A DNA stretch of 64,000 bases from Pocillopora damicornis (GCF_003704095.1 NW_020844410.1:1-64000), one strand, 5' to 3'. Positions 3,634 to 62,520 are shown, counted from the first letter of the stretch. Notes: a model not told the origin generated them from the letters alone. A program made the numbers and translations.

Positions 3634-5263
3634 CGTGGGAGTGGGTATTCCTCTGTCTGAAGCTGGGGGTTAACTGCGGTCTTATAGTCGCCACAAATTC
3701 GAACTGTGTCGTTTGATTTGGCAACTGGCACAATAGGCGTCGCCCAATCGCTGAATTTAATCTTGTGTGGTATGCCTTCTTTTTCTAGACGTTTCAGCTC
3801 CACCTTGACCTTAGGTTTCATGGCGTATGGGACAGGCCTTGCTTTACAAAACTTTGGTTGACTGCCTTCCTTCAACGCGATGCCGATTTCATCCTTAAAC
3901 ACCTCACTATAGTCGTCTATGAGTCTCTCTAATTTCTTCTGGGTGTCTTGTGTCACCTGTTCTTTTGAAATAGCACAGATCCTTTCCCAATCGAGTTGTA
4001 TCTGGTGTAGCCAATCTCTTCCAAACAACGCCGGCCCTTGTGTTTTCACTACATATAACGTTAAGTCCTTGACTTGGTTGTTGTGTTCCACGCGAACAAG
4101 TAGTTCGCCTTCTGGTGTTACCTTCTCTCCTGAGTAGGTTTTCAAAATAGCGGTGGTGTCGACCAGAGGTGTGTTTGGGAAGGTTTCCTTATACGTCTCC
4201 AAGGGGAGTGTAGATATCGCTGAACCTGTGTCTTGCTCCATCTTCAGTTTGTGGCCATTAACTTTTGGTTTCACCCAGATGACGTCACCAACTACCCCAT
4301 GGTTAATATTGTTGACTTCTGGGGATGCCACCAAGCTATCATCAATGCGCTCATCATCTACCTCGAACGAGTGAAGGTTGGGGTTCTCGTTCCTTCGTCT
4401 TCGGGTAGAGTTCTGACCCTTTCCTGAGCGGCATACTCTTTGGATATGGCCTAATTTCCCGCATTTTTGTATGTTTCATTCCTGAAGTAACACTCGGCTG
4501 ACTCGTGTGTACTACCCCCACATCGATAACACTGAGATTTTGATTTGACATCATCTTTCCCTTTAGGAACTCTTTCGCTATCCTTGTTTATTTTGTTGAC
4601 TTCAGACTCTTTATTAATGTTACCCTGCAATTCTAGTGGTTCTTTCGCTGCCGCTTCCATTTCTGACGCTTTGGCCAATGACAAATCTGGCTCGGAGAGC
4701 AGCCGTTTCTGGATAAGTTCATTGTGTAGTCCACACACTAGTCTGTCTCTTAACGCGTCATTCAAGTTAGTTCCGAATTCACAATACAGCGACAATTTCT
4801 TTAGTTCAGCAAGGTATGAACTTACGGTTTCACCTTCGAGTTGGTTCCTTTTGTGAAAGCGGAATCGCTCTGCTATGAGCAGTGGTCTCGGTGACAGATG
4901 CTTCTGTAGTGTTTCTACGATAGTCTTGAAAGACAGGCTGGATGGCTTGGCTGGGGCGGCCAAATTGCGTAGTAACCCATACGTTTTGTTTCCCATTAAG
5001 CTTAGCATTACGGCCACTTGCTTGTTGTCCTTGATTTCGTTGGCAATGAAGTATTGCTCTAGACGTTCCACATAGGCGTTCCAATCGTCGTTCGTTTCGT
5101 CAAACGCTTCAATCTTTCCAATCTGTATAGGTTTAGGTATGGTAGGCAGGTAGGTAGGTAGGTAGGTAGGTAGGTAGGTAGGTAGGTAGGTAGGTAGGTA
5201 TAGGTATAGGTAGGTCGAAGTTTCTCTGGTTGCTGCGTAGGATCTAAATCCTCATCGCCAATC
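3631..5263 (-). mobile_element. Ty3/Gypsy internal region, copy 2 (degenerate): gag with CCHC knuckle, aspartic protease, RT N-terminus
   Basis: gag WNAYVERLEQYFIAN...LIAERFRFHKRNQ...LRDRLVCGL; knuckle CYRCGGSTHESAEC; protease DTGS; RT start WATPIVPV...RICGDYK...YPLPRI. Confidence 0.92.
5127..5215 (+). repeat. (TAGG)n microsatellite
   Basis: Long run of tandem TAGG units with degenerate edges. Confidence 0.95.
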
Positions 5264-10780: not shown

Positions 10781-11728
10781 TTACAGGGAAGCAGCGAGTT
10801 TAGAATCAACGAAATTTTCTGACCGAAATGTTCTGCAACAAAAGGTTCCTCTAATGTGTTGGCGAAAGTTATTACTATGAAGAGCGTAAATGAAGGGATT
10901 TATGGCTGAATTGACGCCAACGAGTACTACTGATATGATATAAGGAACTGAGCCATATGCATACACTTCTGGCTCATACTTAGACAACATATATAACACC
11001 AGGTTAGGTAACCAGCATACTGTGTACATTAAACTCACCACGAAAACCATTTTTGTCACTTTCAGCCTTGATCTGATTCGCGCTTGCTCAGTGACCCCTA
11101 AGTTATTGGGATTTCCTCTATTCCAGAGATTGCAGAGCACCTTTAAATATAAAACTGCCATGGCTCCCACGGGAATAGCACCGAAAACAAAAAAACAAGC
11201 AATGGTGTAAGCTTTAGCCAGATGTTCATTCGCCCAGTGTTCCGGGCAATGGGTTACACCGCGTTTATCATATCGAACAACAAAAAACAAGGGCAGGTTG
11301 AAGATTATGGCGTAAAGCCAGCCAATGATTATGATCGAGATTAATCGACGATTTGTAAGTCGCCAACGATCGCCAAAGGGGTAAACAACAGCGAAATAAC
11401 GCTCAATAGCAACAACTACCAATGAGAATGCTGATGCAGCCCCACCAATCCAGATGAAATTCCCTCCAGTTATAAACTTGCACATGAAATCCCCTGCAGT
11501 ACCTGACGGGTGGTGAAACGCCCACTTGATGACATAAACTGGAATGATAAAAAGCGCCACCATGATATCTGAGGCCGCTAGGTTCACAAGAAGGTAATTG
11601 ACCGGTGCTCTCATTCCATGGTATCGGAACACAACCAGGCATACTACGGTGTTTCCCACGAGATTCACTATAACCACCACAGAGAAAGCAACGGTGAGAC
11701 CCATGTCCAGTGACGTCATAGAAGTCAT
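10781..11728 (-). CDS. Class A (rhodopsin-like) GPCR, neuropeptide-receptor-like, single coding exon, 315 aa
   Basis: Seven hydrophobic segments; GN (TM1), NLAASD (TM2), C3.25, ERY, CWLP and NPFIY; splice acceptor just upstream of the ATG (~11745). Confidence 0.95.
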   Translation of the reverse strand: MTSMTSLDMGLTVAFSVVVIVNLVGNTVVCLVVFRYHGMRAPVNYLLVNLAASDIMVALFIIPVYVIKWAFHHPSGTAGDFMCKFITGGNFIWIGGAASAFSLVVVAIERYFAVVYPFGDRWRLTNRRLISIIIIGWLYAIIFNLPLFFVVRYDKRGVTHCPEHWANEHLAKAYTIACFFVFGAIPVGAMAVLYLKVLCNLWNRGNPNNLGVTEQARIRSRLKVTKMVFVVSLMYTVCWLPNLVLYMLSKYEPEVYAYGSVPYIISVVLVGVNSAINPFIYALHSNNFRQHIRGTFCCRTFRSENFVDSKLAASL

Positions 11729-27600: not shown

Positions 27601-28355
27601 ACCCTCTGAAGAAAAAAAACGTGGTTGCTGTGATGAATTAAAAAAGACACGCGAACATTCCTGTGTTGTCATTTTTTAATACTCTTGAAAACGAAAACAA
27701 TACAATCAATAGAGCTGATAAAATTGTAACAGAATGCACGCGCATACTTGATGTTTCATCTGAATCGTACGATCAAAACAATCGAGAAAACTCCTCGAAT
27801 GGAAACCATAAGGAAATGTTTTGATATCTATAGAAGTTCGCAGGCATGACCGCCAAAGTCCGATAGCGCTCTAAGTCTCATAATTGACATATCTCCAAAG
27901 ATCTCGCTAACTTTCTCTTTGAAAATGAAATACCTCTTGTCCGTGGTTCAACATAAAAATGTCGCAATATCCACCCCTCTGATTGTGACTTAAAGTAGGC
28001 AAGCGATATGGGTCCTTTCCTATTTTTTTGCAAGTGGCACGCGATTTTCAGTGAATACTTTATCCTAGTCTCAACATTTGCATCCTCCTTTCTCGTGTCC
28101 AGGCAACTCAGGTTACCTCATAAGTAAGAAATGAAGGCGGCCCAAGCCTTAGGACACTCTTGGTAGCCTGCGATAAAAAATGTTCTTCTTGATATAAATC
28201 GGCTTTTGTTCATTGAGAGGAAAACATACCGTAACGCTTCATATGCGTCTCTCCACTCTCTGGATTGAAGCTTTTGCTTGGAAGCTTGACATACATGCTG
28301 GTTGAGAATTCGAGATTTTATGTAACACTTGTAATTATGCATCGAAGAGCGACTT

Positions 28356-28982
28356 TCATCTGCGAAATTCCTCTGAATTGTGTCCGTATTGAAGCATGCT
28401 AACTCCTTGTATGTACTCAAAACTGGTTTTTCGTTTGGCTTTTTGGTTGTCTTTTGATTCAAATAAACCGCCCGGTGGCGACGAGTTTTTTTCGGGAACT
28501 TGATCGTATTTTGAAGAGTACCCCATGACAGAAGTAAGGTTACCATCAAAGTCGTCGCAATTTCCTTTAGGATTGGCCGACATGCAGATAGACTTGCTAA
28601 TTTGACTTATATAGGCCGAGTCTGGTTTTCGACCCTGAGAATTATCCGCAATTTCTGGATCATAGAGAAACGGCTCGCTATGAAAAATTCCATCGGTTGT
28701 ATCACTTCTGCTTTCTGTCCTTAACGTTTCGTTGGTTAATTTGGGGTTATGAAAGAACTCTTGGTCCAGGACTATCTCTGGCTGGGAGTCAAGAGCCAAC
28801 GTTGAATTGATCTGTCTAATTCTCTTCAACCATTCCATGGAACGTTTGTCTTTTTCCCAGCGCAACTTTTGAACTTTTGGCATACGCGGTTTTGTTGCTA
28901 GGGAGATAAACCCTGTTGAACCAGGTCGTATTTGGCAATGATCATTTTGGACCACTTGAACTATAGGAGATAGCCTTTCCAT
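28356..28982 (-). CDS. Uncharacterised protein, family member A (208 aa)
   Basis: Shares PxVxKLxW-x5-SxEWL and RKPDSxYIS blocks with ORFs 33044-33490 and 36641-37501; acceptor TTTTGCAG ending at 29071; candidate 5' non-coding exon donor at ~30180. Confidence 0.75.
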   Translation of the reverse strand: MERLSPIVQVVQNDHCQIRPGSTGFISLATKPRMPKVQKLRWEKDKRSMEWLKRIRQINSTLALDSQPEIVLDQEFFHNPKLTNETLRTESRSDTTDGIFHSEPFLYDPEIADNSQGRKPDSAYISQISKSICMSANPKGNCDDFDGNLTSVMGYSSKYDQVPEKNSSPPGGLFESKDNQKAKRKTSFEYIQGVSMLQYGHNSEEFRR

Positions 28983-29089
28983 AAGGACAAGTCTTTGGTG
29001 CCTTATCTTGTTCCGGCTCCTTTTCTACTCCTTATTTACCTGAATGCTATTAGTTTTCACAATCAACAACCTGCAAAACAAAGATAGAC

Positions 29090-29252
29090 ACGCATGCGTG
29101 GTTGGTTAAAACGACTACTCTAACTGAAAAATATAATTTTACTGTAAGTCGTGTGTGTCTGTAAATTATCACGCACCATTTGATTGGACAAACCAGTGAT
29201 GTTTGTATGTTCATGTGAAAGCTTAGCTGCTCCAGTGACGTATTAATGATTG
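29090..29252. repeat. ~165-bp locally duplicated non-coding element (second copy ~31708-31874)
   Basis: Both copies run from ACGCATGCGTGGTTGGTTAA through CCATTTGATTGGACAAA to GTGACGTATTAATGATT. Confidence 0.85.
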
Positions 29253-32200
29253 CAAATTTTTTTGTCGTAATAACATATTAAATTCTGAAGCATTTTTCCC
29301 TTTGAAAACGCCGAACAAAGGGCTTAAAAAGTCAGTTTTCTAGGTTTTCACTAGATTATGGAATGTGAAAGAGATGTGTGATTAATATGTTCAAATAAGA
29401 ATGTTTACTGGAAGTTCAGGAAAACGGATGATCGTTCAAACCGGTACCGAGTGCCATTTCTAGCGAGCGCTAGCTAATATTCGAAAGTGATTAAGATCCA
29501 GTGGCTTTTTGTTATCATCCCTTGAAATATGAATCTACACTGGACCGTCTTATTGCGGAGCAGAATTAGTTACTTTCCCCAAAATAAATGCAGATTCCGA
29601 GATTTTCTGAACACCGTTTCATGCTGTCAACACATCTAGTTTAGATAACTATGCTGCGGTTCTAACCGCGACCGGAGAGTCAAAAAGTTGATAGTGTAGT
29701 GATTTCCTCAGTGAAAGCGTAGTTCTGAAAAGGATTGTTGCCCTTGGAATAATGACTAACAGCCTGAGCGGAAGTCATCCCCAGAGTTAAGGAGTTATTC
29801 GTCAGTGGTAGAGCATTATAAACCGTGCTCGTGAAACACTCGACTGAATGAATAATTATTCATTTGACTAAAATAAACAAACTTGCATGTTTGAAAAACA
29901 GATGACCCCATCTTTCAATCATTTTCGAAGACATTAAATACACAGACAGAATCTATTCAAGTTTTTCATTCAAGTGACACTCTATACTGTGCCTAAGTTT
30001 CAAGGAGGTTAATGTATCCGTACTTAGATCAGCAGAACAGTTTTTTTTTTCGAAAACGTTAGCGAAAGAGTTGAAACGATGAACGAAACGATTTCTTCAA
30101 AATATACTTAGAAACAGACAACCTAAATGATGATCGTGGAGATCAATCTATCAAAACACGATAAAGATCGGTCCACTTACCACTCAGATGAAAACCAGTC
30201 GAACCAGAGCAACTTTCGATTTGTTGTTAAAACTCAACACGTCCTGAATAGAGTTTGAGGCATCAGATTTGTTATTAGTGTTGATCAATGTTTTAAACAA
30301 GGTTTGTTGTACGACTTTGCAGTGGAATCCTTTTGACGCGTCAGTGATTTATTTTTAAATTTCTGAATTTTTTGAATGTACTTACGATATCATAACAAAA
30401 GAAAAAATAAATTAGAATTAATAGCGATCGTTAAGTTCTGCCTGTCTTCTAGTTACCCCCTGAGGCGTTCAATCGCACGTCATGCAATCGTGATTTTTTA
30501 ATTCAAATAAATGTCACCATATGTACAAGACTTAAGAGCTTAGCTTTGTTACGAATGACAGACGAAATCCCAGATAGGTTATTGTGACAATTCCAATGTT
30601 AGTTGTCCATGTTAAAGAATTGCATCTACGATGATTTTCATATAACCTAAATAAAGATGGCGGCAGTTCCACTCATTGATGATTAAACGATGGTTAGTGC
30701 TGTCATTTAAAATTCATGACTGTTTCTGCATGTCATAGGTTCTTTTGTCTGACTGTTAATTTACCTCCAATATTCGCCTTTATCGCCGCTTTACGTAGAG
30801 GCTTAATCATAACAAAAACTGAGGAAAAAAGAAGGAAAATGGAGAAATGAAACAAAAATAAATAACTTTAAAGATGTAGTGTAATGCCAACTAAGGGTAT
30901 CGATGAAAGTACCAAAGGTTAACTTATTTGTTTGTTGGGTAATTGAAGTAGACTTTAAGAGCCGGTTATCCTAAATTGGACCGCCTTTTTAGGATTTCAA
31001 TAGACTTTCAGATTTCTTAATAAAAGCGGTTTTGTAATAAGCATTATTGCAATGTTAGTTGTAAGTGTCCTAGACACTGAACACAAAAGTTAGATAAAAA
31101 GTTTGACTAAACAAGAGATTATTTACGACGCGGTAAAACTAAACAAAGGCTTAACCTTATCTACGCCTTAACCATGTCGCGTGCCCGCTCACTGATACGA
31201 ACAATAGGAAGCAAACACTGTGGTTTTCAAAGTGAGAGGCCAATACTTTCACTTCGTTGACAGAAGAGTTACGCATTTTTCCTGTCTTAAGGATGGCAAT
31301 ATAAGTAATTTGTTGGCTCGTATATAGCAGAGTCATCATGAAACGTCAAGAAAGTAATTAAGAAGCATTGATTTCAATATTGGTACAACCTTGTGTCGGT
31401 CAACACAATGGAGCTTATTTTGTGTTATGTAGAAATATCAATTCCAGTTCAGAATTGTGATACCCAACCACTAAAAACTGAGATTGAAGTCAAATTTTGA
31501 TCTTGTTTTTAAACACACCATGGTTCTGATCATATGTGCTAAATATTTCCCTTTCTCTTGCCCAGCTCTGTTTGAATCACATAAGGAAAAGGGAAAAAAA
31601 ACAATCAAAATGACTGAGTACTCTTCAGCTTTCTAAGTTTATCGATAAGTAACGCATATGAAGGTTGTTAGTTTTTACAATCAATAATCCACAAAACAAA
31701 TGAAAAAACGCATGCGTGGTTGGTTAATGACTACTCTAACTGGAAAATATGGAAAATATAATGTTATTGTATGTCGTGTGTGCCTATAGTTAAAACGCGC
31801 CATTTGATTGGACAAATTAGTGATGTTTGTGTGTTCATGTGAAGCTGATCCTCTCCTGTGACGTATTAATGATTTCCCTTTCTTGTGTCCACCACTGTTT
31901 GCATAATAAAAGAAAAAGGAAAAAAAAAACAATAATCGAAAGGACTGAGCACTCTACTGCCTTCTAAGTTTTTTATCGACGAATAACCGTCTGCATATGA
32001 TGGATATTTTTAACTTGAAATCCTCGGTGAAACCAGCAGCCGGCGCTGGTACTAGAACGAAATGTTTGTATTATACCATCAACTATTATCAAAAATTACA
32101 ATCTCTTACTATTGTAGATGTGAACATGTGAACAAATCAGTACAATATTAAACCTTAACCAGCTAGAAGTTATATAATATAACACCACACTAATGAAAAT

Positions 32201-33043
32201 TCTAACGAAGCCGAATACACGAAACTGTGGATCAGTTGAGAGAATTTCCAACCAGATATTTGGAGTCAAGAGATTTAATTTTCCCGATTAAAAATCACTG
32301 TGCTGTAAAGAGAATTGAAACAAGGAGATTTTAGTTCATGAGGGCAAACATATCTCTTGACGCAACTACACAAAGCATTCCGTCATCGAAGACTTATGAA
32401 AGAAGACAGAAAGAACTCTGTAGGTCTTCCTTTCCTGATATGAACCCTGGGAGCTTTGATGCGCTTCCAATTTATTGAATCTGTGAAAGATTTTGGTGGT
32501 CTATAACAGACTTGAGTTTCATCATTTGATTTAGAACTGACGTAAAAGTTAAGGATGCAACCAGGAGGGGAAGGGTGGGGATCCAATCAGTAACAGATAT
32601 GTCAAAAAAGTTTAGTCATAACAATGGATCAACTTGACAGGTCCACAGTTATCGTACTTCAGTGATTTGTACGTTAACCTACAGTCAAAACAGCAGACAA
32701 ACGCCATTCAATGGTTGTATTTCCAGGAATTTGACAAATTTACTTTAGGACAATGTCTTCATTTACTTATTCACGATCTGTTTAGGTGAATAATTAATTT
32801 AATTGTTTGAATGCAATCAAGCATTACATCCAGAAGCTTCTGTCTCTCACAAGGCCGCGAATGCTGTTAGTTGCTGGACATATTTCTGAGTCGCCATTTC
32901 GTTCAATATCAATCAAAGCTAAGCACGATTAACACCATTTATATCAATTTCCGTTTCATCCAATCCTTGCTCAAGTGTACAACAGATACTCATCACTGTG
33001 TATTACCTTCCGTGCAATTTCGTGTGCCTACTGTAATCCTTGG

Positions 33044-33490
33044 TTATGTTATTCCATTTAACAAACAGATATACGTTGAATCAGGTTTCCGCCTGTTGGT
33101 ATCTTCAATATTTAGGGACTTCACTGATGAAGGTCGATTTAAGCTTGAAATTTTAGCTCTTTCTTTTAACTCTGTTAAAGCAGATTGCCTCCTGAGACCA
33201 TCAAGGCTTTGACTTTTACGACCACTTTTGAACTGTCTGCTTGTGTATTGCGTTGTAGAGATTTGCATGTCTTTTGTGTTAATCTTGATTTGATTTATTC
33301 CGGGTTTAATGGCAAATACAGATGTTTTAACGAGGCTCATTCGCTTCAGCCACTCTTGAGAAATACTGCTCTCTGTCCAGGACACCTTTTGGACTGTTGG
33401 AACTGTTGGTTTGGATGCCGTTACCTGGCCGCCATATGATTCCGTTTCTTCCACGATCCTCGGAAGCCCTGGATTAAAACACTTTGCCAT
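33044..33490 (-). CDS. Uncharacterised protein, family member B (148 aa, possibly C-terminally truncated)
   Basis: PTVQKVSWTESSISQEWLKRM and RKPDSTYICLL match members A and C. Confidence 0.7.
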   Translation of the reverse strand: MAKCFNPGLPRIVEETESYGGQVTASKPTVPTVQKVSWTESSISQEWLKRMSLVKTSVFAIKPGINQIKINTKDMQISTTQYTSRQFKSGRKSQSLDGLRRQSALTELKERAKISSLNRPSSVKSLNIEDTNRRKPDSTYICLLNGIT

Positions 33491-36400
33491 TCTTGTTAGC
33501 TTTCATTCCCCAGTGTTCATTCAAACTCCAAGCGAAGTTAAGAAGTTGTTCATTCTAGCATCAGTATTCAGCAGTCCTTATCCAGCAGCTCACTAGCTAT
33601 TTGAACCAAAAAGAAATCCTGAATATCTTTTCTTCGTTTGGAGATAAAGATTTTGACGACTAAAGTCCAAATGAATTTCCTTTCAGACAATCAGTCAATA
33701 ATTAACGAAAGCTACTATTGCTACGTCTAACTTGCTATGTCATATTGTCAAAAAGTCGTTTGAAAAATAAACTTAAACAGCAAAAATACCGTGGAAAATC
33801 TTATCATTAATTATTTAGAATATCCAAGCAAAGATGGAACAAAGATTTTCCATAAAACCCATGCTAACAAATTGGATGTAAAATTAACTTTTAAAAGTGT
33901 GATCAAAGATTAACCATTTAGCAATTGATTATCGCTTATTTTCTGGCCACCAGGTCAGAGACAGGTTATTAACTGTAGACACCGATTTATATTCATTAGT
34001 ATCATTAGATAGGTAAACTGTCGGACTCAATGTTATTTATTTTCATACAGGTGAAGTGCTATGTCAGCCACCTATGAATTATACAATAATGCGAGTATCC
34101 TACAGTTAGTGTCGATTTCTGTCTGATCAGTTTGTATCGCGTAGTTATTCAGTTATATCTGAGAATAGGACAGCCTACAAAAAACAAACAAGGCAGTAAA
34201 CAAACCTCTCTGTTAACGCAGAGAAAAATCATAAAGAAACGACGATTTCAGGACAGGCTTTACTGATTTTCCATCGCCGTAGTTTTTTCGCCGTCAGTCG
34301 GCTTGGTTACTGTTTATGTATCTGGATTAACAACTATGAGAGAGTTTTGGTTTTGTACGGTTGCCAGAAGCAACCTAAAAAATCCTTCCATCACAATAAG
34401 TTTAAGTCGCCTAGTATTGCCAGCGTTTCACTTGACTAACATAATAGAAAGTTCTAAGCAATATAATCCCATCAGACTGTTATGACATTATCCTTTTAGA
34501 AGCTGATTCCCTTTATTTCACGTCTTACCTCCCGCTGAGTTTTTGAACTGGCGACGTAAGCAGAGTTGTTTTTAAATAATCTGACGTAAGTGGCTGAATA
34601 CAACATCAAATGTAAGACCTCTGTAAGAGGTTAAGTGTCAGAAAACTTACCACCAAAATTACTGCCTTTCATTTCAACTAGTCTCTTAACAGTACAACCA
34701 AAAAGTTGCTGAAAGGTTTGACTCAAATCTTTACATCAGTGTTACTAAACAACAAATGCAATATAATTAACTCCGATATCAATAGCAAACCATTTTAAGC
34801 GGGTGTGAGGAACAAAAAGATTTAAGTGTATTATGGTACCGCAAACCCTGCATATATTGTGTACATTCAATGGCTACGTAGACAGAGAGGCTGCACTGAA
34901 CAAAACCTGCATGAACTTGGGTTTGTATGACGAATTTATTAAATTATTAAAATTTTCCAATTTATTATTAACATTTTGCTCTATACTTACTTTGAGGAAT
35001 GTGTAATATTTAAGTTCAGTTGTATTTCTTTCTTGATATTCAGCAGCTAGTATTCTATTGAAGTAAAACATGATGAGAGTAACTTCAATAAATTAAAACA
35101 TTTCTTTTATACGATACCGCAGCATGTAAACAAAATGGATCTCCCGCAATGGCCCCCGACGTAATGCGTATTGGTAGAATTTTGATCATTAACTTTGACA
35201 GATAAGTTGCAAGGCAACCAGAGTGAGTAAGATTTCGAAAATTCCCCGTACGGTTTTGAAGACCAACTCCTCAGGATTGAAATTGTGCAAAAGGTTTTTT
35301 AATACGGTCAGATTTGATATGCGATTAATTCGCTCAAAAAAATATCGTCCATTTCGAACTGTCCCGCCCCATTCGGTTTACGATTAGTTCAAGCGAAAAC
35401 GAAATAATTTCTGGCTAATAATGCATTTCATAATCTTTCTGTTGATATATAGTTTATGTTGGTTATGTTTCAAAAGGCGCATTAATTTTTTTTTTGCGGA
35501 GGACACCCGCGAAGGTCTATTGTATCCTTTGAGTCTTTTTGGAGACATATTCACGATTAAGAAAAAGAGGAATTCACGGGACCCGTATTTTCTCTTGTCA
35601 CGAACTATCGATACCTTTTACTAAAGGAAATGTGATTGACTGGATTTGGTCATGGTGTTATTATTATTATTACTTTAGTTCTGCCCTTCAATTGATTTTA
35701 ATAAAGTGGTCGCCCCAAGTTTTCAGATCATTCACTTAAGAATCTCTTGGTCAGTTAGAATATATCAGGGTGAAATAACCGAAAACTAGATGTACAAACT
35801 ATGGTGTGGGAAGTGAGGGGGGTGGGGACCGGGGGTTACGATTTAGTAAGGAATAAAGGAACTGACAAAATCATACGTAATAAATAATATTTATTTTCAT
35901 CGCGTAGACTTGACAGACTTACATAATAGATTGCATCGTTGATATTTTTTAATTTAATATAATGTACAAGAAATAATCAACTTTTGGCTTCTAGTTAAAT
36001 TTACCTGGGATACACATTTCACAATTACAACTTTAATAGACAGACACAACAGATCGCTATTTCAAAATCTGCGTAGCCTCTCTTTTCAAGTCAAATAAAA
36101 CATTTTCTTGTGCTGTTTTCAAAGAAATAATTTAACTCAAATAACTTTTCTTTCAATACATGTAGAAAACGAAATTTTCCTTTAAAACTTTTTTTCCTTT
36201 TGATTTATTGAATTCTAATTAATTTACAAATAATTCAGAGAAAATTAATGTTGCATGTCAAAATCAATCCCGACTTAGTCACCTCTGTGATTTGAGGTTG
36301 ATCACTAACAGATGCTGGATGAACTTCTTATGGGCAGAAAGTTTTCACTGCTTGAAAATGGCTCCTTCAATTTCCTAAGGTTTTGGGTTGACTCAACTTA

Positions 36401-36640
36401 GTCTAATAGCGCTGCAGTCACGAACGACTAGTTTTTTTTTTTTTTAACAGATCATCGTTATCGCGTTAGGAGCTCGCGCAAAATTAAAGAGACCATTGGT
36501 TTAACGAACACATTATTATCTACACCACACCTTTCCCCGTGTTATTGTCCTCTTGTTTCACGCTTCCCTTGTGCACGAGTGGCAGGTAACATTATCTGTA
36601 TACCACCATGTATCAGTTATGAACTAGCTAGCATCCTTAT

Positions 36641-37501
36641 CTACCGGCCAATCTGTTTAATGTACTCGCAACTGCTCGACAGTTGACGATGAGCGTTGGG
36701 GGAAGAGCAGAAAAGCTTTCGTTGAGTAAACATGTTCATTTGAATGCAATTTAGATTTTTACAGTTTTTCGCCTTCTTTAGTTCATGATTCTTTCCCTCT
36801 CCATCTATGTGGTGTCCACCAAATTGCGCATGCGTCTGCTTTTGTGTTTCCTGTGTTAATCCGCTGATCAAGGAAATGTACGTTGAATCAGGTTTGCGTA
36901 CGTCAGAAAGTTGAGGCAAGCTTTCCTTCCTCACAACCTTTACAAAGCGTTCGGATGGTGCAATTCCACGTATTTTAGACGAGTCTTGACGACAAGGAAC
37001 AAATCCTGCTCTTTTTCTATCACTGCTAGAGTTTAGCGTAGGCAATTTTCCGGAGCGATGAGGGCTTTTTGGTGTGCAAATCTCCAAGTGATTCATGGTG
37101 GATGTTAGTCTGTTGATCTTGTTCAGCCACTCATCTGATAACTTGTTGTCTGTCCAGTTCAATTTCTTTACCTCAGGAACCCTTGTGTTAATAATCGCTG
37201 GTTTTTCCAACTCTAGGTTTTCATCTTCCTCTATCAGGCATGGCAAGGGGTTTAGACGCTTCACCATTGGGTATGAATGCGAACGCTGTCGAAAAAATCT
37301 GTTTTTTGGCCAGGCCACATTACTAACTTGCTCCACGTATGACCTAGACATGCTTGGGAAACAAGGAGAGTCGGCTGTGGCCTTTACAACATATTCCTGT
37401 CGGCGAAATGTTAACACTTTCTTTGCCAGTGTATCGTGTTTGGAGCGTTGCTCTTCGTTTAGGACGTTATCTTTATCGATCTCACAAAAGAAAATTTCCA
37501 T
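36641..37501 (-). CDS. Uncharacterised protein, family member C (286 aa)
   Basis: PEVKKLNWTDNKLSDEWLNKI and RKPDSTYISLI; acceptor CCACAG two bases before the ATG; candidate upstream donor at ~38820. Confidence 0.8.
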   Translation of the reverse strand: MEIFFCEIDKDNVLNEEQRSKHDTLAKKVLTFRRQEYVVKATADSPCFPSMSRSYVEQVSNVAWPKNRFFRQRSHSYPMVKRLNPLPCLIEEDENLELEKPAIINTRVPEVKKLNWTDNKLSDEWLNKINRLTSTMNHLEICTPKSPHRSGKLPTLNSSSDRKRAGFVPCRQDSSKIRGIAPSERFVKVVRKESLPQLSDVRKPDSTYISLISGLTQETQKQTHAQFGGHHIDGEGKNHELKKAKNCKNLNCIQMNMFTQRKLFCSSPNAHRQLSSSCEYIKQIGR

Positions 37502-40500
37502 ATCTGTGGGTTAAAAAACAAATATCTGTAAGTCACGCATGAGCAATACGCAAAAGTTTTGTAGTAGTCTTATTCAATTCGGAGTATTCTAACGGCCTCG
37601 AGTAAGAGAAAGAGAATATTAGATGTGATATTGAAATAAAAGAAACAATATTAATAAAGAATAGTGCACTTTTGAGAGACAAGAACCTGTGCATCCGATA
37701 GTGATCTCAGGATATGGCGAGGTCAAAAAACTTGAAATTTTTATCCCGTTAATTGAATTGCTTATATTGAATTCCAAGCTCGCGCACGGTAGCATTTGAG
37801 TTTCCTCAGATCACTCTTTGCCCAATTTAACGTGTCGGCATCACAAGTAATTAAACTAAAAAACCGGGTCCTACCAGAAAATGTTTGATTACACACATTT
37901 TGATCAACAAGTCCTATTTTTAGGGGTTTTTTCAGCGACACAACGTCAATAATTGACACCAATTGTATTCTTAAACAAAACTGTTTGCTTTGTGTCTTTC
38001 AATCTTTTGTAGTTCACTGCATGAAAAGTCGGGAAAACTTATGACAATGTAAGAAAAAGCTAACTAAAGATAATTCATTTTCCCTTCTCGAGAAACATGA
38101 AAGTCAAAATATCCTAAGAAATAACTTCCGTTTATCTTCCTTTCTGCTCTCCGGCGTTTGGTTGAGAATTTTCCAAAATATCAAGAGAAAATATTATGTA
38201 ACTTTTCAGTAATAATAGTCGCCCTAAATTCATTGCGCAGCTACATACTGCTGTCGCATGAGTCTAGCAGAACTTTTGGTTTGATAAACCAGCAAGTAGA
38301 TACGGTGCTTAACTCGTAAATGTTGTGTAGTTTGTCTTAATTCCAGACAGTTGAAATGCGTTTCACGTTAAAGGAATTTCAAAGCCCACCTCTGTGTTCT
38401 TTGTCTGTATATGCCCATGCCCATACCATGCTCCGTTATATTGGTTATAGGCCTCTGACCGAAACGGGCCGTGAGAAGAAACCAGTTTCGGTTCAAAGAA
38501 ATGCATGGCATAGGACCAAATTTGACAGTTTAAAAAAAAAACGCTCCTGGGGTTTGTCTAGAGATAAATGCATTAATCGTGGCTTTTCTTAATCTTCTAA
38601 GCAAAGGTTAGCAATTTTATAGACCTCTTTCGATGGCATCACCTGAGGAAGGGTCGAATCTACTTATTACTCAGTGATCCTTAAATCGCGTGATTGGACA
38701 TAACTCAAAGTGATACCGCAGCCAAAGTAAACATTGAATGTCGTGACAACGAAAATAAACTTAAAAAACAAAACTCTTCACGACAAATGTACTTTTGAGC
38801 TTATCTGACCACATACTTACCTGGCTCATCATATTTCTAACCAAGATCACTGTGTTCGATCTAGCGAATTGTTTAGCTTATCTTTAGAAAAGATAACATA
38901 GGTACTAAATAGAGTTTAGTTCTGACTATTTTCTTCAGGGTCCATTGGAGTGTTATCGTTTCGTCAATGAGTCAATCAATCAGTCAATTTATTCATGGAT
39001 TACCGGATAAGGTGTCAGATCACGCAAAGAAATTGCAATATACCTCAGTAATTGTCTAGGTAGCTTCCTCAAAATGACAAATGTGTGAAAATATCTCATT
39101 GATTTAGAGGACGAAATGAAATGCGCAAACGACTTCTCTGCACTATGTTTTCTTGTGTAGCTCAGCATCAGTTGGAAAAAAGTCATTGGAGTGCTAACAA
39201 TGCAAAGCAGAAGTATAAACAAAAGGGCAAATGTAATTGGAAATTATAACTTGTTTAGTCAAAGTTGGCGGTGAAGACAATATAGACACAATTGTATCGG
39301 CAATGCCGTAAATATGGCATTCGGTGAACAATAGCGGAGTGTATTTGCATTTCATAACAACCGCAAACTTTGCATATTGTGTTGATGTTTTTCTTATATG
39401 TTTTGAGTCTAAAAAGTGCGGAAGTCGATCGAGGTTTATATCATCAATGGAACCTAAAAGGAATACGTTTAAAAGACTTCAAACTTCTTGAAACGAACGA
39501 TAGGTTGCATTAACTCAGTAAACTTCTATGTAACCATCACAAATGTTTCAGTACATCGGCAGCTTGGAATTGAGACATCAACGCTTAATTAAAGTTGTAA
39601 CTGACGTGCCGATTGGCTTTTTCTGAACGCTGCAAGATGACAAAATACTGAATTTTTTGTAAGTTATGTTCTTTGAAATATTTGCTCGTGGTCCTAAACG
39701 GTATAAGTCGTTGAGTTATCTGAAACGTGATTTAAAAAAAAGCAAAAGCTCCAAAACGTGCGTTGCGCCTTTCATGTTTACTATTCATCAGGTGATCTGT
39801 TCGCAAATGAACGGCGTCTTTTCTTGTTTAATTTATCTAGCTACAGGTCGTTTACCCTCAAGAAAAAAGTGTGATAACGACCATGGTGAAACAAAAGCAG
39901 ATTTTTTTTCATGCTAAGCCGGCTACCGGCAACATGGATACCTAGTGTACAAACTGAAAAATATTGTTCAAACGCTCCTGATCTGAAGAGTAATTAAGTC
40001 TGTAAATTGGAAACTATGTTTTTTTACCTGAAAGGAATTTTTCCACGCGTATATCAACTGCTTTCACACATTATCGTCGTGACTCGTTCGCTAACTGAAG
40101 CTCAAATGAGAGAAGGCTGTGGGGGTAAAGTATCCTAATAGGTAGACTTTGTATGTCACGACACTCGCAGCATACGTGCTGTGGCCCTTGATGGCTATTT
40201 CCGATCGAGTTACTCTGCCAAAATGGAGAAACTTCTACTTAATGCCTGCCTACCCCACGCAAAACTCCAAAATTTCGAACTCACCTCACGACAACAGCGG
40301 CGTGTCTAAATTTTTTTTCCTGTCGCGGTAACCGCTTGCATTATATCTAAATCTACATACTTGTCACCGGAAATTCTTCACTGAGTGGGCTATATATTTA
40401 AATGAGCAGATATTTTGGTTTTGTTTGTTTTCAAGACTTCCCGTCTTTCTTACGCGCACGTTTCAAGTATCCCGGTAGGTGAAATGGACTAAATCTTCAT

Positions 40501-44979: not shown

Positions 44980-45921
44980 TTACCCTCGCATTTGAATATC
45001 ATTTACAACAATTACATCCCTTCTCTCCCAGCATCTTACGACAAGACATTTTTCGCAACATTGCAGTAGCTGCCTCAAGGACCTTCTGAAGCGTTCACTC
45101 TGAAGACTGTACAAAAATGGGTTCACTGTAGAGTTCACGCAAACCAAAACAGTGCCGACCTTGTAAGCGATGGAGCCATATTGGAAGCCAAAGTACGAGA
45201 GGACATAAGTGACAGTGTCAGGAAACAAACACACTCCGTGTAAAGCTGTGATAATTAGTAAGAGCTTCGTGACTTTTTTCCTTCGTTTAAGCAATGCTAA
45301 ATGAGTTCCAGCGTGGTTACTGCCACGCCACAAGCGATAAATCACTTTGCTGTACACGGAAGCCATGAAAGTAAACGGCAGTATGAAGTCGAAGAACAGA
45401 GTCGCTAAGGTGTATGCTCTGGCAAAGCCAATATTGGGCCAATCTTCAAGACAGATTTTTCGGTCTGTGTCGTACTTCATCACTAGTATCGCAGGGATCT
45501 CAGATATCACAGCAATCAGCCAACTGGTTACAATTCCAAGTTTTACTCTCAGAGGCGTCATACGACCTTTTTTTCCGTATGGAAACAAAACTGAGTAGTA
45601 GCGGTCGGAGGCAATTAGCACCAAAGTGAAGACGGAAGCCGCTGTTCCCACCCAACTCAAGCTCCCACCAGTAGCTACCTTGCAAAGAAAGTCACCGACC
45701 GGAGGCTCAGGATGATGAAAAAATGGACGGACAATATACTGTGGGGATACAAAAACGGCAAAAGACATGTCAGCAATAGCAAGATTTACCAAAAGGTAGT
45801 TCATTGGCACTCTCAAGGATTTGTTCTGGAACACAACAAGGCAAACCAAAGTGTTTCCAACCAGGTTTACGACCACAAGGATGGAGAAAATTACCCCGAG
45901 AACAACTTCTGTAACGGACAT
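44980..45921 (-). CDS. Class A GPCR, same subfamily as the 10-19 kb cluster, 313 aa
   Basis: NLVGN, PMNYLLVNLAIAD, CKVATGG, DRY, CLFP and NPFLY; acceptor AG immediately before the ATG. Confidence 0.94.
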   Translation of the reverse strand: MSVTEVVLGVIFSILVVVNLVGNTLVCLVVFQNKSLRVPMNYLLVNLAIADMSFAVFVSPQYIVRPFFHHPEPPVGDFLCKVATGGSLSWVGTAASVFTLVLIASDRYYSVLFPYGKKGRMTPLRVKLGIVTSWLIAVISEIPAILVMKYDTDRKICLEDWPNIGFARAYTLATLFFDFILPFTFMASVYSKVIYRLWRGSNHAGTHLALLKRRKKVTKLLLIITALHGVCLFPDTVTYVLSYFGFQYGSIAYKVGTVLVCVNSTVNPFLYSLQSERFRRSLRQLLQCCEKCLVVRCWERRDVIVVNDIQMRG

Positions 45922-61100: not shown

Positions 61101-62520
61101 TTTCATGGCCAAAGTATTCTTTGATGGCGTCGTAAGGCTGGTATTTGAAAATTCTGCCAAATCTTGCCCAGTCTCTCTTCAATTGCTGGCGTTTGTTTTT
61201 TGGAGACTCGCCACTTTCTAATCGATGTGTTCCTTCATGCAAAGGATAACATGCCAGATATACACCATCATAAAGAAGCTTCGAGAGACCCACGTCATCC
61301 GGTTGATCTGAGAATGGAGTGCTGTGAAGGATTTGCTGCAGAAGATGTTGGCGATCAGTGACTGGAAAAAGCGAATTTTCACCGACATTCTGATCAAAGA
61401 CATACTTGGAAAGATGATCTCTTTTGAATTGGCCCATGAAGTAATCCGTATTTTTCTCAATAGATGCATCACGAATCTTAAAAGGGTTTCTCCTGTTAAT
61501 GGCCGTAACTACAGTTGATCCCAGCAAGTACTCCATCCAAGAAGTAAAAGTGGTGTCGTTAACCAGAAAGGGAACCTTCAGTTTTGCAGACTCGGCTCTT
61601 TCAGCGAGAACTTCCAAGGGAACGTGAACCAAGACAAAATGCCTCAAAACCTCAGTATCCTTTTAGAAGAGAAAAAAAAGATAAGATTAAATATGTAACG
61701 GAAACTTTTTTTTTATTGAAATGTGACGGAAAGTTCATAATAAATGCAATTTCCCTTTCCAAAACTTTTTGCACGAAAATAACTTTGAAACAAAAGTTAA
61801 GCCGAGGAAAGTGGACTCTGACCTTCTTAATCAAGATTTGCGCAAACAACCAAATGTTGCGAAACGCTTCTCTCCTTTAAAACCAAATTATTTCCTAGAT
61901 GCGTACTTACTAGGCCATGAAATTTGCTCATATTTGCATAGTAATCGATGTGACATCTCTTATCGTCCAAGTCACTTTCATATCCATAAAAAATTTTAAT
62001 AAAACACGAGCAAAATTTAATTGAGAATTAACATCAAACCTCACAAAAATAGAAAACAATTCTTCTTACTGTTAATTGTTACCACTGTTTGAATTAATAA
62101 TGAGGCTCTGATTGAAAGTCAGAAATGCACTAGCTAGTCGGCTTTTGGTTTACTTTTTATAAGTGGCAAAGTGTGCAGCGTTAACGGTAACGCTTGGCTA
62201 GTTTTCTATTTACTAAACAGATCAAAAAACGGTCTTACCTGTTGAATCGCGCGTGTCTGTCGCTGAAGGATTAATCCTCGTCTTTCGAGCTGGTTTTCGA
62301 AATATGTTCTTTGAGTCGTCAGTTTAAGAGCGGCAGCCGCAGATTGTTCACTTGCTTCTTCATCTTCTTCACAAGTTTCAAACACCAACACGTAATCAAT
62401 TCTTCGCCTCGGCTCACTACTGCTCAAATAAACTCCTTCGTTATCATCCGTGATAAAATTTTCTGAAACAGTTTCATACTCTTCTTCGTCCAAAAGTCTT
62501 GATAATTGTGTTTTACTCAT
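58152..62520 (-). CDS. Anoctamin/TMEM16 family protein 2 (~871 aa, 5 coding exons), tandem paralogue
   Basis: Exons 62520-62239, 61659-60107, 59561-59437, 59361-58938 and 58383-58152; same intron positions and phases, and same motifs, as the neighbouring gene. Confidence 0.95.
58648..58676. repeat. Poly(C) tract at the end of an intronic repeat element
   Basis: About 29 consecutive C after GGACCCCCCTA. Confidence 0.85.

What the first reader, a model, noticed from the sequence alone, without database searches (positions are those of the whole stretch)
28356..37501. Tandem family of three unassigned proteins sharing two exactly spaced motif blocks
Seen: three co-oriented minus-strand ORFs (28356-28982, 33044-33490, 36641-37501), about 4 kb apart, with single coding exons and otherwise low-complexity, basic, Ser-rich sequence. 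They share block 1, P-x-V-[QK]-K-[LV]-x-W-x5-S-x-E-W-L-x-[RK]-[IM] (PKVQKLRWEKDKRSMEWLKRI / PTVQKVSWTESSISQEWLKRM / PEVKKLNWTDNKLSDEWLNKI), and block 2, RKPDS[TA]YI[SC]x[IL] (RKPDSAYISQI / RKPDSTYICLL / RKPDSTYISLI). A weaker N-terminal M.(K)RL(N/S)P..I pattern and a C-terminal S.EYI in A and C are also present. Protein-level islands conserved while the DNA between them has diverged imply purifying selection on short interaction motifs. I recognise no domain. Inference: an undescribed, possibly anthozoan-specific family of intrinsically disordered signalling adaptors, located among GPCR and ion-channel genes.
Basis: partly seen in the sequence, partly recalled or inferred. Interest (0 to 1): 0.88.

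Follow-up and report, generated by a model that had tools for sequence, protein, structure and literature searches.

The report
Coral-restricted trio of disordered-protein genes
Three neighbouring genes in a stony-coral genome encode related, mostly unstructured proteins of a family seen so far only in stony corals; they are real, transcribed and kept together as a trio across coral species, but their function is still unknown.

Summary
ORFs A (28356-28982), B (33044-33490) and C (36641-37501), all on the minus strand, are true paralogues (BLASTP E 1e-8 to 1e-12) and the only copies in the 234 Mb genome, so they are not transposon ORFs. Each is a complete CDS on one coding exon. A and B are covered by contigs from RNA libraries of three studies, and A has a GT..AG intron in its 5'UTR. 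dN/dS is 0.24-0.36.

The same C-B-A array, flanked by the same GPCR, AP-endonuclease-like gene and ASC channel, occurs in Orbicella faveolata and other coral assemblies. A tree resolves three orthogroups, so B is a conserved short paralogue and not a pseudogene.

A profile search of 1.84 billion proteins found 24 representatives. All named relatives are stony-coral "uncharacterized" proteins. There are no Pfam or PDB matches, and AlphaFold predicts mostly disorder.

The function is inferred only. The proteins are probably phospho-regulated docking proteins. C-type members always carry an RxRSxS[YF]P (14-3-3/AGC-kinase type) site. The PP1 RVxF reading fits B-type (25/31) but fails C-type (0/34).

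This is a genuine undescribed lineage-restricted family of moderate interest. The "signalling adaptor" label is unproven.

The parts
36641..37501 (-). Gene C, complete CDS (286 aa, C-type orthogroup)
   Evidence: ORF. In-frame TAA 4 codons upstream of the ATG. 99% identical protein P0002 with 158 member sequences. dN/dS 0.235 against the orthologue transcript L004.
35878..37676 (-). Approximate extent of the gene C transcript (5'UTR, CDS, about 0.75 kb 3'UTR), collinear with no intron seen
   Evidence: Orthologue transcript contigs L004-L006 align collinearly to 37676-35878. The CDS is 85-86% identical and the 3'UTR 65-76%. A poly(A) signal lies at 35895. L004 begins with an Illumina adapter, so no extra 5' exon is indicated.
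37268..37291 (-). C residues 71-78, RQRSHSYP: basophilic-kinase / mode-1 14-3-3-type site, specific to C-type
   Evidence: Coordinates. R.R[SA].S[YF]P is present in 34/34 C-type members and twice in 11/34. This is the lowest dN/dS region (0.07-0.18 over residues 1-100).
37115..37177 (-). C block 1 (residues 109-129, PEVKKLNWTDNKLSDEWLNKI)
   Evidence: AlphaFold helix at residues 121-141. The Trp is invariant family-wide.
36866..36898 (-). C block 2 (residues 202-212, RKPDSTYISLI)
   Evidence: Pro and Tyr are invariant across 25 divergent members. Short predicted helix at 206-212.
36656..36673 (-). C C-terminal block (residues 277-282, SCEYIK)
   Evidence: S.EYI is present in all A-type and C-type members and absent from B-type.
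33044..33490 (-). Gene B, complete CDS (148 aa, B-type orthogroup, lacking the C-terminal third of A and C)
   Evidence: ORF. In-frame TGA 5 codons upstream. 99% identical P0099 with 110 member sequences. Full-length orthologues in Orbicella (49% identity) and other corals. dN/dS 0.27-0.36.
32712..33596 (-). Gene B coding exon (exon 3) with 3'UTR
   Evidence: RNA-library contigs cover 32712-33598 at depth 546 (X1) and 66 (X7), against 30-43 upstream. Acceptor ...CAAATAG| sits at 33597/33596.
34104..34174 (-). Gene B 5'UTR exon 2 (inferred from the orthologue transcript)
   Evidence: L024 nt 217-297 align to 34182-34104. There is a polypyrimidine-TAG acceptor and a GT donor at the edges.
34651..34871 (-). 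Gene B 5'UTR exon 1 (inferred from the orthologue transcript)
   Evidence: L024 nt 5-225 align to 34871-34650 at 83% identity. A GTAAGT donor follows 34651.
33338..33400 (-). B block 1 (residues 31-51, PTVQKVSWTESSISQEWLKRM), including KVSW, a canonical RVxF-type pattern
   Evidence: The strict RVxF pattern holds in 25/31 B-type members.
33059..33091 (-). B block 2 (residues 134-144, RKPDSTYICLL), 4 residues before the stop
28356..28982 (-). Gene A, complete CDS (208 aa, A-type orthogroup)
   Evidence: ORF. In-frame TAG 15 codons upstream in the spliced 5'UTR. 98% identical P0001 with 180 member sequences. dN/dS 0.26 against L026.
27766..29070 (-). Gene A coding exon with 3'UTR (the lower limit is a minimum)
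   Evidence: A 1305-nt RNA-library contig covers 27900-29071 and runs 133 nt further left. Depth is 112-800, against 14-29 in the intron. A poly(A) signal lies at 27680.
29071..30180 (-). Gene A 5'UTR intron (1,110 nt; GTAAGT...TTGCAG on the minus strand)
   Evidence: The joint 29068->30179 (cut +2) skips 1110 nt and is seen in all 4 RNA runs from 3 studies. Splice consensus read.
30181..30379 (-). Gene A 5'UTR exon 1 (upper limit approximate)
   Evidence: Contig 30179-30379 at depth 166 in X2, against 9.6 upstream. Spliced contigs are present in X1, X4 and X7.
28818..28880 (-). A block 1 (residues 35-55, PKVQKLRWEKDKRSMEWLKRI)
28599..28631 (-). A block 2 (residues 118-128, RKPDSAYISQI)
28407..28424 (-). 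A C-terminal block (residues 187-192, SFEYIQ, preceded by KRKT: a PKA-type [RK][RK]xS site)
   Evidence: [RK][RK]xS.EYI is present in 13/13 A-type members.

Best explanation
This is a conserved three-gene cluster (order C, B, A on the minus strand) of a protein family restricted, as far as can be seen, to stony corals.

Shown:
- Each gene is a complete CDS on one coding exon.
- A and B lie on contigs from RNA libraries, and A is spliced in its 5'UTR. C has transcript-like orthologue contigs.
- All three genes evolve under purifying selection.
- The trio with its flanking genes is conserved in other corals, and the members form three orthogroups.
- The proteins have no known domain and are predicted to be mostly disordered, with one amphipathic helix in block 1.

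Inferred (mechanism): they are non-enzymatic docking or regulator proteins that work through short linear motifs and are controlled by phosphorylation.
- The shared core is block 1 (hydrophobic-x-W, then S-x-[ED]-W-L-x-[KR]-[IM] as a helix) and block 2 (R-K-P-D-S-x-Y-I-S-L-I-S). This core binds one or more common folded partners.
- Subtype-specific modules give each paralogue a different input. C-type has one or two RxRSxS[YF]P sites (basophilic AGC-kinase site that would create a 14-3-3 docking site). A-type has a KRKxSFEYI PKA-type site. B-type is the minimal core and has the best PP1-type K-V-x-W pattern.

The partners are unknown.
For: - Paralogy.
- Only 3 copies in the genome.
- Transcription and splicing: A intron GT..AG in 4 runs from 3 studies; B on a discrete 887-nt high-depth contig; orthologue transcript contigs collinear with C and, in three exons, with B.
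- Complete ORFs with upstream in-frame stops.
- Purifying selection: C 0.235, B 0.27 and 0.36, A 0.26. CDS is better conserved than the 3'UTR.
- Conserved array plus flanking GPCR, AP_endonuc_2 and ASC channel in Orbicella (L007) and L026, and clusters in L009 and L012.
- Three orthogroups on the tree, with core clades at SH-aLRT 96-99.
- Narrow distribution: 24 representatives among 1.84e9 proteins, with named ones only from Orbicella and Oculina.
- No domain.
- Disorder with isolated helices.
- Motif statistics: Trp, Pro and Tyr invariant; RxRSxS[YF]P in 34/34 C-type; a basic residue at -3/-4 of the block 2 Ser in 75/78 members; [RK][RK]xS before EYI in 13/13 A-type.
Against: - No partner, phosphorylation or localisation has been shown, so the mechanism rests on pattern matches to short, degenerate motifs that often occur by chance.
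- The subtype labels used in the motif counts were defined by some of the same motifs (14-3-3 site, S.EYI), so 34/34 and 13/13 are partly circular, although the tree supports the groups.
- The block 2 Ser is replaced by Pro in two A-type members, so it cannot be an obligatory phospho-site.
- Contigs from RNA libraries cannot prove strand or exclude DNA carry-over, except where a splice is seen (A).
- The deep tree nodes are weak (59-88, quick tree).
- Co-folding of C residues 51-100 with a 14-3-3 from this genome gave no answer.
Confidence: 0.55

Rival explanations
1. The family are PP1 (protein phosphatase 1) regulatory or inhibitor subunits. Block 1 would be an extended RVxF-PhiPhi-basic docking string (K-[VL]-x-W, then W-L 8 residues later, then K/R). 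Block 2 or the C-terminal phospho-site would act on or near the catalytic site, in the manner of inhibitor-1/DARPP-32 or PNUTS/Phactr-type binders.
For: The strict RVxF pattern [RK]x0-1[VI]{P}[FW] sits exactly on the invariant Trp in 25/31 B-type members (KVSW is the commonest). The looser ELM form fits 11/13 A-type. W-L at +9/+10 and K/R at +11/+12 resemble the RVxF-PhiPhi-R string described for Phactr1, spinophilin, PNUTS and PPP1R15 (PMC7599070). The proteins are small and disordered, with basophilic-kinase sites.
Against: C-type members, the best conserved orthogroup, fail the test: 0/34 strict and 3/34 loose, with TLNW the commonest form and no basic residue. RVxF therefore cannot be the ancestral, family-wide role of block 1. 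The PhiPhi element normally adds a beta-strand to PP1, whereas AlphaFold predicts this stretch as a helix. There is no match to any Pfam PP1-regulator family. RVxF-like patterns are common by chance. Binding could not be tested: PP1c genes here are split into small exons, and a joined model was not built.
Confidence: 0.15
2. The two invariant tyrosines (block 2 S-x-Y-I-S-L and C-terminal E-Y-I-x-Q) are the working parts. The proteins would be phosphotyrosine adaptors (ITIM-like or SH2 docking, YxxQ type). Alternatively, block 2 would be an Atg8/LC3-interacting (LIR) or YxxPhi sorting motif.
For: [SILV]xYxx[ILV] and an acidic/Ser-Thr-preceded Yxx[LIV] hold in 31/31 B-type and 34/34 C-type members. 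EYIxQ holds in 33/34 C-type. Tyr and the preceding Pro are invariant.
Against: Only 4-5 of 13 A-type members keep the +3 hydrophobic residue, and only 2/13 keep YxxQ. These patterns are very degenerate. There is no membrane anchor, SH2/PTB-related domain or other supporting context.
Confidence: 0.1
3. The family is a very distant invertebrate relative of vertebrate MACIR (C5orf30; Pfam UNC119_bdg). MACIR is a roughly 206-aa disordered protein that binds 14-3-3, UNC119 and TNPO1.
For: The language-model atlas ranks MACIR clusters as the top named neighbours for both C and B (0.75-0.77). The size, disorder and 14-3-3-type sites are similar to those described for MACIR (preprint 10.1101/841999).
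Against: Scores under 0.8 are at the tool's noise level, and only 4 of the 10 best named hits agree. B and C are paralogues, so the two hits are not independent. PF15435 matches none of 53 member scans even at E up to 10. Searched against this genome, PF15435 hits only an unrelated locus below cut-off, which lies antisense to a transporter-like exon. No R/K/H-x2-5-PY nuclear import motif is present in A, B or C (sequences). MACIR is reported as vertebrate-only.
Confidence: 0.04
4. The ORFs are not functional protein genes. They would be transposon remnants, chance ORFs in non-coding RNAs, pseudogenes (especially the short B), or exons of larger genes.
For: There is no known domain, the composition is low-complexity-like, and B lacks the C-terminal third. 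Close-relative differences in A are mostly non-synonymous (6 of 8 listed).
Against: There are only three copies, all syntenic. The ORFs, starts and stops are conserved across corals, including a full-length B orthologue ending at the same place. dN/dS is 0.24-0.36. In-frame stops lie just upstream of each ATG in the mature 5'UTR, so no larger ORF is possible. No RT or transposase similarity was found.
Confidence: 0.03

Closest known systems
Uncharacterized coral proteins: LOC110063966 [Orbicella faveolata] (P0009); hypothetical proteins ACROYT_G038980 and ACROYT_G038978 [Oculina patagonica] (P0040, P0113)
   Same: These are true homologues. P0009 is the C-type orthologue (53% identity) in a syntenic C-B-A array, and the Oculina entries are C-type and B-type members two gene numbers apart.
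   Different: They carry no functional annotation. The B-type and A-type genes of the Orbicella locus are not among the called genes there and were found only by tblastn.
PP1-interacting proteins that use an RVxF-PhiPhi-R(-W) string (Phactr1, spinophilin, PNUTS, PPP1R15A/B; PMC7599070), and small disordered PP1 inhibitors (inhibitor-1/DARPP-32, from my own knowledge)
   Same: Both are disordered. B-type and most A-type members have a [KR]-[VIL]-x-W pattern on the invariant Trp, followed by two hydrophobic residues and a basic residue. Basophilic-kinase sites lie downstream.
   Different: C-type members lack the basic residue and have Leu or Phe in place of Val or Ile (0/34 strict). The following segment is predicted to be helical. 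There is no sequence-family match, and binding is untested.
MACIR / C5orf30 (Pfam PF15435 UNC119_bdg)
   Same: MACIR is about 200 aa, disordered, has no homology to other families, and carries 14-3-3-type phosphoserine sites. It is the top named neighbour in the language-model atlas.
   Different: There is no HMM match in either direction, no PY-NLS, and MACIR is vertebrate-only. The atlas score is at noise level.
14-3-3 client proteins with mode-1 sites created by AGC kinases (for example BAD and FOXO; named from my own knowledge)
   Same: C-type members carry R-x-R-S-x-S-[YF]-P, which fits both RxRxxS (Akt/AGC) and RSxSxP (14-3-3 mode 1). The site is duplicated in 11 of 34, which would suit a 14-3-3 dimer.
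   Different: It is only a motif-level resemblance, it is absent from A-type and B-type, and co-folding gave no answer.

Membership tests
PP1 regulators with an RVxF-PhiPhi-R string | RVxF motif [RK]-x0-1-[VI]-{P}-[FW] at the docking site | tested here: inconclusive
   At the invariant Trp of block 1 the motif holds in B-type 25/31, A-type 3/13 (11/13 if Leu is allowed) and C-type 0/34 (3/34 loose). It is met in one orthogroup and not family-wide.
PP1 regulators with an RVxF-PhiPhi-R string | PhiPhi motif a few residues after RVxF that adds a beta-strand to PP1, followed by an Arg motif (PMC7599070) | tested here: inconclusive
   W-L (or L-L, L-F) lies at +9/+10 and K/R at +11/+12 in all 78 members. 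AlphaFold predicts this stretch as a helix.
PP1 regulators with an RVxF-PhiPhi-R string | Physical binding to the PP1 catalytic subunit | not testable with these tools
   PP1c genes in this genome are split into exons of 48-133 aa. The only intronless Metallophos ORF is ApaH-like.
MACIR / UNC119_bdg (PF15435) | Match to the Pfam model over its gathering score (27 bits) | tested here: not met
   No PF15435 hit in 28 + 25 member scans at E up to 1 and 10. A genome-wide six-frame search with PF15435 does not touch the window.
MACIR / UNC119_bdg (PF15435) | PY-NLS (R/H/K-x2-5-PY) that binds TNPO1 | tested here: not met
   No 'PY' dipeptide is present in A, B or C (translations).
14-3-3 clients (mode-1 site) | R-S-x-(p)S-x-P motif in a disordered region | tested here: met
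   RQRSHSYP at C residues 71-78. The motif is present in all 34 C-type members and absent in A-type and B-type. The C-type label was defined by this motif, but the tree supports the group.
14-3-3 clients (mode-1 site) | Phosphorylation-dependent binding to 14-3-3 | not testable with these tools
   Co-folding with an intronless 14-3-3 of this genome returned 'no answer', which counts neither for nor against. Phosphorylation cannot be modelled here.
Transposable-element ORFs | Multiple dispersed copies, and RT, transposase or integrase similarity | tested here: not met
   There are exactly 3 matches in 234 Mb, all in this array. No such Pfam domain was found. Synteny is conserved across species.
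Any curated protein family or solved structure | Significant sequence match | tested here: not met
   Pfam gave nothing consistent. PDB profile searches gave 0 hits at E up to 10.

The most novel reading that the evidence does not exclude
The trio is a stony-coral invention: a lineage-specific set of three co-located, abundantly transcribed disordered regulators. They would share one docking core and plug it into different kinase/phosphatase inputs (14-3-3 switch in C, PKA-type site in A, PP1-type docking in B). That would form a coral-specific signalling module whose origin coincides with Scleractinia.
Probability: 0.12. Interest if true: 0.6.

Novelty: new variant of a known kind. Interest (0 to 1): 0.42.

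Why it matters
Lineage-restricted genes make up a large, mostly unread part of coral genomes. They are candidates for coral-specific biology such as calcification, symbiosis and stress responses.

This family is a clean, tractable example:
- There are three small single-coding-exon genes.
- Gene order has been conserved since before the window's coral, Orbicella and Oculina diverged.
- The genes are under purifying selection, and RNA-library contigs over A and B have high depth.
- The sharply conserved motifs (invariant Trp, Pro and Tyr) give obvious mutational handles.

If a partner such as PP1 or 14-3-3 were confirmed, it would show how a new disordered regulator family is wired into ancient signalling enzymes. 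If not, the result still gives names, boundaries and orthogroups for genes currently annotated as 'uncharacterized' or not annotated at all.

Tried and rejected
- **Known families:** Pfam on the three proteins and on 28 + 25 family members gave only scattered single hits at E > 0.01.
- **Solved structures:** PDB sequence-profile searches with A1 and A4 gave 0 hits.
- **Language-model atlas:** the best named neighbour is MACIR at 0.75-0.77, which is noise level. I followed it up with PF15435 against the genome. The only hit (24.4 bits, below cut-off) is antisense to a transporter-like exon, so the lead is rejected.
- **Transposon reading:** rejected, as there are only 3 copies.
- **Pseudogene reading for B:** rejected. 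Full-length orthologues end at the same place, the gene is transcribed, and dN/dS is 0.27.
- **Larger-gene reading:** rejected, because upstream in-frame stops are present.
- **PP1 co-fold:** not possible.
- **Complex prediction:** 14-3-3 (L018:1471-2223) with C residues 51-100 gave 'no answer', ipSAE 0.01/0.00, and the controls were not run. This is no evidence either way.
- **Literature:** no paper mentions LOC110063966, and searches on coral taxonomically restricted or disordered proteins found nothing about this family.
- **5' exon for C:** a search using the unaligned start of L004 showed that the unaligned part is an Illumina adapter.
- **Tree:** the careful tree did not finish in the time allowed, so the quick tree is reported.

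Full report
**1. The observation.**

- A three-way alignment reproduces block 1 (P-x-V-[QK]-K-[LV]-x-W-x5-S-x-E-W-L-x-[RK]-[IM]) and block 2 (RKPDS[TA]YI...), the N-terminal pattern, and S.EYI in A and C.
- Pairwise BLASTP gives E = 3e-9, 1e-12 and 1e-8, so this is homology and not chance.
- The spacing inside block 1 is fixed, but the two blocks are 80, 100 and 90 residues apart in A, B and C, and 62-104 apart across the family.
- A is not basic (pI 7.7), while B (10.1) and C (9.5) are.

**2. Real genes, not repeats or fragments.**

A profile of the three proteins finds only these three places in the whole 234,350,878-base, 4,393-contig genome. That rules out a transposon family.

Contigs from four oligo-dT or poly(A) RNA libraries of three studies were laid on 27900-33899.
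- Gene A is covered at depth 112-800 over 27900-29071, against 14-29 in the next kilobase.
- All four runs carry a joint that skips 1,110 nt (29068->30179, cut +2). On the minus strand this intron reads GTAAGT...TTGCAG. A therefore has a 5'UTR exon (about 30181-30379) spliced to the coding exon, and the strand is confirmed.
- Gene B lies on a discrete 887-nt contig (32712-33598) at depth 546 (X1) and 66 (X7), against 30-43 upstream.
- Nothing covers 31300-32100.
- These are contigs, so depth is only a rough guide.

A 1,545-nt contig from another coral (L024, B orthologue, 77% aa identity) maps to the window in three collinear pieces: 34871-34650, 34182-34104 and 33591-32342. Canonical splice signals sit at the junctions, so B has two 5'UTR exons.

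Three contigs carrying the C orthologue (L004-L006) are collinear with 37676-35878. The CDS is 85-86% identical and the 3'UTR only 65-76%. The unaligned start of L004 is an Illumina adapter.

In-frame stops lie 15, 5 and 4 codons upstream of the three ATGs within the mature 5' regions. The ORFs are therefore complete coding sequences and not pieces of larger proteins.

**3. Selection.**

| Comparison | dN/dS | Note |
|---|---|---|
| C vs L004 | 0.235 | dS 0.35; 0.07-0.18 over residues 1-100; about 0.22 over block 1; 1.44 in linker 221-260 |
| B vs L024 | 0.27 | dS 0.45 |
| B vs L026 | 0.36 | |
| A vs L026 | 0.26 | dS about 1.2, near saturation |

These are Nei-Gojobori estimates. Among the differences listed between the window and the RNA contigs, A has 6 non-synonymous and 2 synonymous, and B has 1 and 2. 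A may therefore be the least constrained.

**4. The family and its range.**

The word-indexed search found 40 clusters with the first profile and 27 with a broader one.
- The only names are 'uncharacterized protein LOC110063966' of Orbicella faveolata and two hypothetical proteins of Oculina patagonica, whose gene numbers are two apart.
- An exhaustive HMMER search of 1.84 billion representative proteins found just 24 with E <= 0.001.

The members fall into three size classes:
- **C-type** (about 290-377 aa) has an N-terminal helix, SRSYVEQVSNVAWPK, RPRSNSYP-x-IKRLNPLPRVIEEDE, block 1, block 2, KNCKNLKCI, F-x-PR-x-LFCS and SNSSEYIQQI. Eleven members have an internal duplication of the block 1 plus RPRSNSFP module.
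- **A-type** (about 204-245 aa) ends KRKLSFEYIQEVS.LQYGHN..FRR.
- **B-type** (about 148-199 aa) stops shortly after block 2.

Across 25 divergent members the block 1 Trp and the Pro and Tyr of block 2 are invariant.

A tree of 78 members puts each type on one side of a single branch. Core clades have SH-aLRT support of 99 (A), 96 (B) and 98 (C), and the window's copies show parallel nesting in each. This is the quick tree, and the deepest nodes are weak at 59-88.

The window's B is 99% identical to P0099, which has 110 member sequences. Its 21 extra N-terminal residues come from the gene caller using an upstream start.

**5. Synteny.**

- In Orbicella (L007) the order is AP_endonuc_2 gene, rhodopsin-type GPCR, C orthologue (53% identity), B orthologue (49%, full length), A orthologue (39%), all on one strand. 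The window's minus strand has the same order: AP_endonuc_2 49628-50500, GPCR 44980-45921, then C, B, A.
- In another assembly (L026) the order is C, B, A, then an ASC channel. This matches the window's ASC exon at 22986-24092.
- More divergent assemblies, including Tara Pacific coral metagenome scaffolds, keep the three types adjacent but with B inverted relative to A and C (L009, L012).
- The GPCR next to the most divergent C-type member (L008) has its best relatives (53-60%) on the very contigs that carry family members elsewhere. All its named relatives are stony corals: Oculina, Porites, Stylophora, Montipora and Acropora.

The triplication therefore predates the divergence of these corals, and B is a conserved short paralogue.

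No member was seen from anemones, octocorals or hydrozoans. Small unannotated genes could be missed, so the range is 'stony corals at least, nothing wider detected'.

The genome's size and contig number match what I remember of the Pocillopora damicornis assembly. That is memory only and was not tested.

**6. What the proteins look like.**

No Pfam family matches and no PDB sequence matches. AlphaFold2 on C with a 28-row alignment gives mean pLDDT 51.5 and pTM 0.22. It predicts isolated helices at 16-39, 53-62, 121-141 (the S-D-E-W-L-N-K-I-N part of block 1) and 206-212 (block 2).

This is the picture of an intrinsically disordered protein whose conserved islands are short linear motifs or binding-coupled helices.

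**7. Mechanism (inferred).**

I counted candidate motif readings at homologous positions in 78 members.

| Reading | A-type | B-type | C-type |
|---|---|---|---|
| RxRSxS[YF]P (Akt/AGC consensus and mode-1 14-3-3 site) | 0/13 | 0/31 | 34/34 (twice in 11) |
| [RK][RK]xS just before EYI (PKA-type) | 13/13 | 0/31 | 0/34 |
| Strict PP1 RVxF pattern on the invariant Trp | 3/13 (11/13 if Leu allowed) | 25/31 | 0/34 |
| ITIM-like or LIR-like reading of S-x-Y-I-S-L | 4-5/13 | 31/31 | 34/34 |
| YxxQ at the C-terminus | 2/13 | 0/31 | 33/34 |

- The 14-3-3-type site lies in the region of lowest dN/dS.
- A basic residue sits 3-4 positions before the block 2 Ser in 75/78 members, but that Ser is Pro in two A-type members.
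- The RVxF result, together with W-L at +9/+10 and K/R at +11/+12, resembles the RVxF-PhiPhi-R string of Phactr1, spinophilin and PNUTS (PMC7599070). It cannot be the family-wide role of block 1, because C-type members fail it.

My best reading is as follows. The proteins share a docking core (blocks 1 and 2) for one or more unknown partners, combined with orthogroup-specific phospho-inputs. The 14-3-3 switch in C-type is the single most credible specific prediction. PP1 docking is a plausible speciality of B-type. None of this is shown.

**8. Tests that could not be completed.**

- PP1c genes in this genome are split into small exons.
- The only intronless Metallophos ORF is an ApaH-like enzyme.
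- Two tandem intronless 14-3-3 genes exist. Co-folding one with C residues 51-100 gave 'no answer', which counts neither way.

**9. Comparison with known things.**

The language-model atlas ranks vertebrate MACIR (PF15435) first among named clusters for both C and B, but at 0.75-0.77, the tool's noise level. HMM tests in both directions are negative.

MACIR is described as a vertebrate-only, 206-aa, disordered protein that binds 14-3-3, UNC119 and TNPO1 via a PY-NLS. The coral proteins have no PY motif. It is an analogue in style and not a demonstrated relative.

No paper mentions these genes.

**10. Verdict.**

The work here adds gene structures, transcription evidence, three orthogroups, conserved synteny and further motifs.

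The 'signalling adaptor' function remains a hypothesis. Lineage-restricted disordered families are common in corals, so interest is moderate and not high.

Noticed in passing
window 10781-11728 (-), 14368-15303 (-), 17861-18943 (+), 44980-45921 (-): Four intronless rhodopsin-family GPCR ORFs (7tm_1, E 1e-37 to 1e-47). The one at 44980-45921 is part of the conserved synteny block next to gene C in Orbicella and other corals.
   Followed up: partly
window 22986-24092 (-): A large exon of an amiloride-sensitive sodium channel (ASC/DEG-ENaC, E 1e-42). An ASC gene also follows the A-type gene in locus L026, so it belongs to the syntenic block.
   Followed up: partly
window 53475-54998 (-) and 60103-61647 (-): Two very similar large ORFs, each with an anoctamin dimerisation domain plus the first 278 positions of the anoctamin channel domain. 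They look like tandemly duplicated anoctamin (TMEM16) genes.
   Followed up: no
window 49628-50500 (-): An ORF with a xylose-isomerase-like TIM barrel (AP_endonuc_2). The same gene flanks the array in Orbicella (L007:1-864).
   Followed up: partly
window 251-1045 (-), with further ORFs at 3113-5071 (-): A retroelement fragment with an RT-associated RNase H domain (RT_RNaseH_2, E 2e-36). It lies in a region of higher G+C (0.43-0.45) than the rest of the window. It is unrelated to the trio.
   Followed up: no
G000:C2648:96202-96882 and 98395-99090 (+) (loci L019, L018): Two tandem, apparently intronless 14-3-3 genes (full-length Pfam matches, E 1e-88 and 1e-96). A further set of multi-exon 14-3-3 copies, some with stops, lies on contigs C2811 and C2929.
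   Followed up: partly
G000:C1725:60791-61645 (L017:1292-2146, +): An intronless 284-aa ApaH-like / diadenosine-tetraphosphatase-like metallophosphoesterase. Its best PDB match is 2qjc (E 1e-39).
   Followed up: partly
Proteins P0005, P0008, P0025, P0027, P0028, P0030, P0031, P0034 (other corals): One C-type subclade has an internal duplication of the module [block 1 + RPRSNSFP + RLNPLP]. This gives two 14-3-3-type sites and two block 1 copies in proteins of 337-377 aa. The window's C has the single-module form.
   Followed up: partly
Loci L009 and L012/L013 (other coral assemblies): In the more divergent assemblies the three paralogues are still adjacent, but B is on the opposite strand to A and C. 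A local inversion therefore occurred in one lineage.
   Followed up: no
window 28356-28982 (gene A): Of the eight best-supported differences between the window and the RNA-library contigs inside the A CDS, six are non-synonymous. None changes an invariant residue; K46Q lies in a variable position of block 1. A may be evolving faster than B and C.
   Followed up: partly
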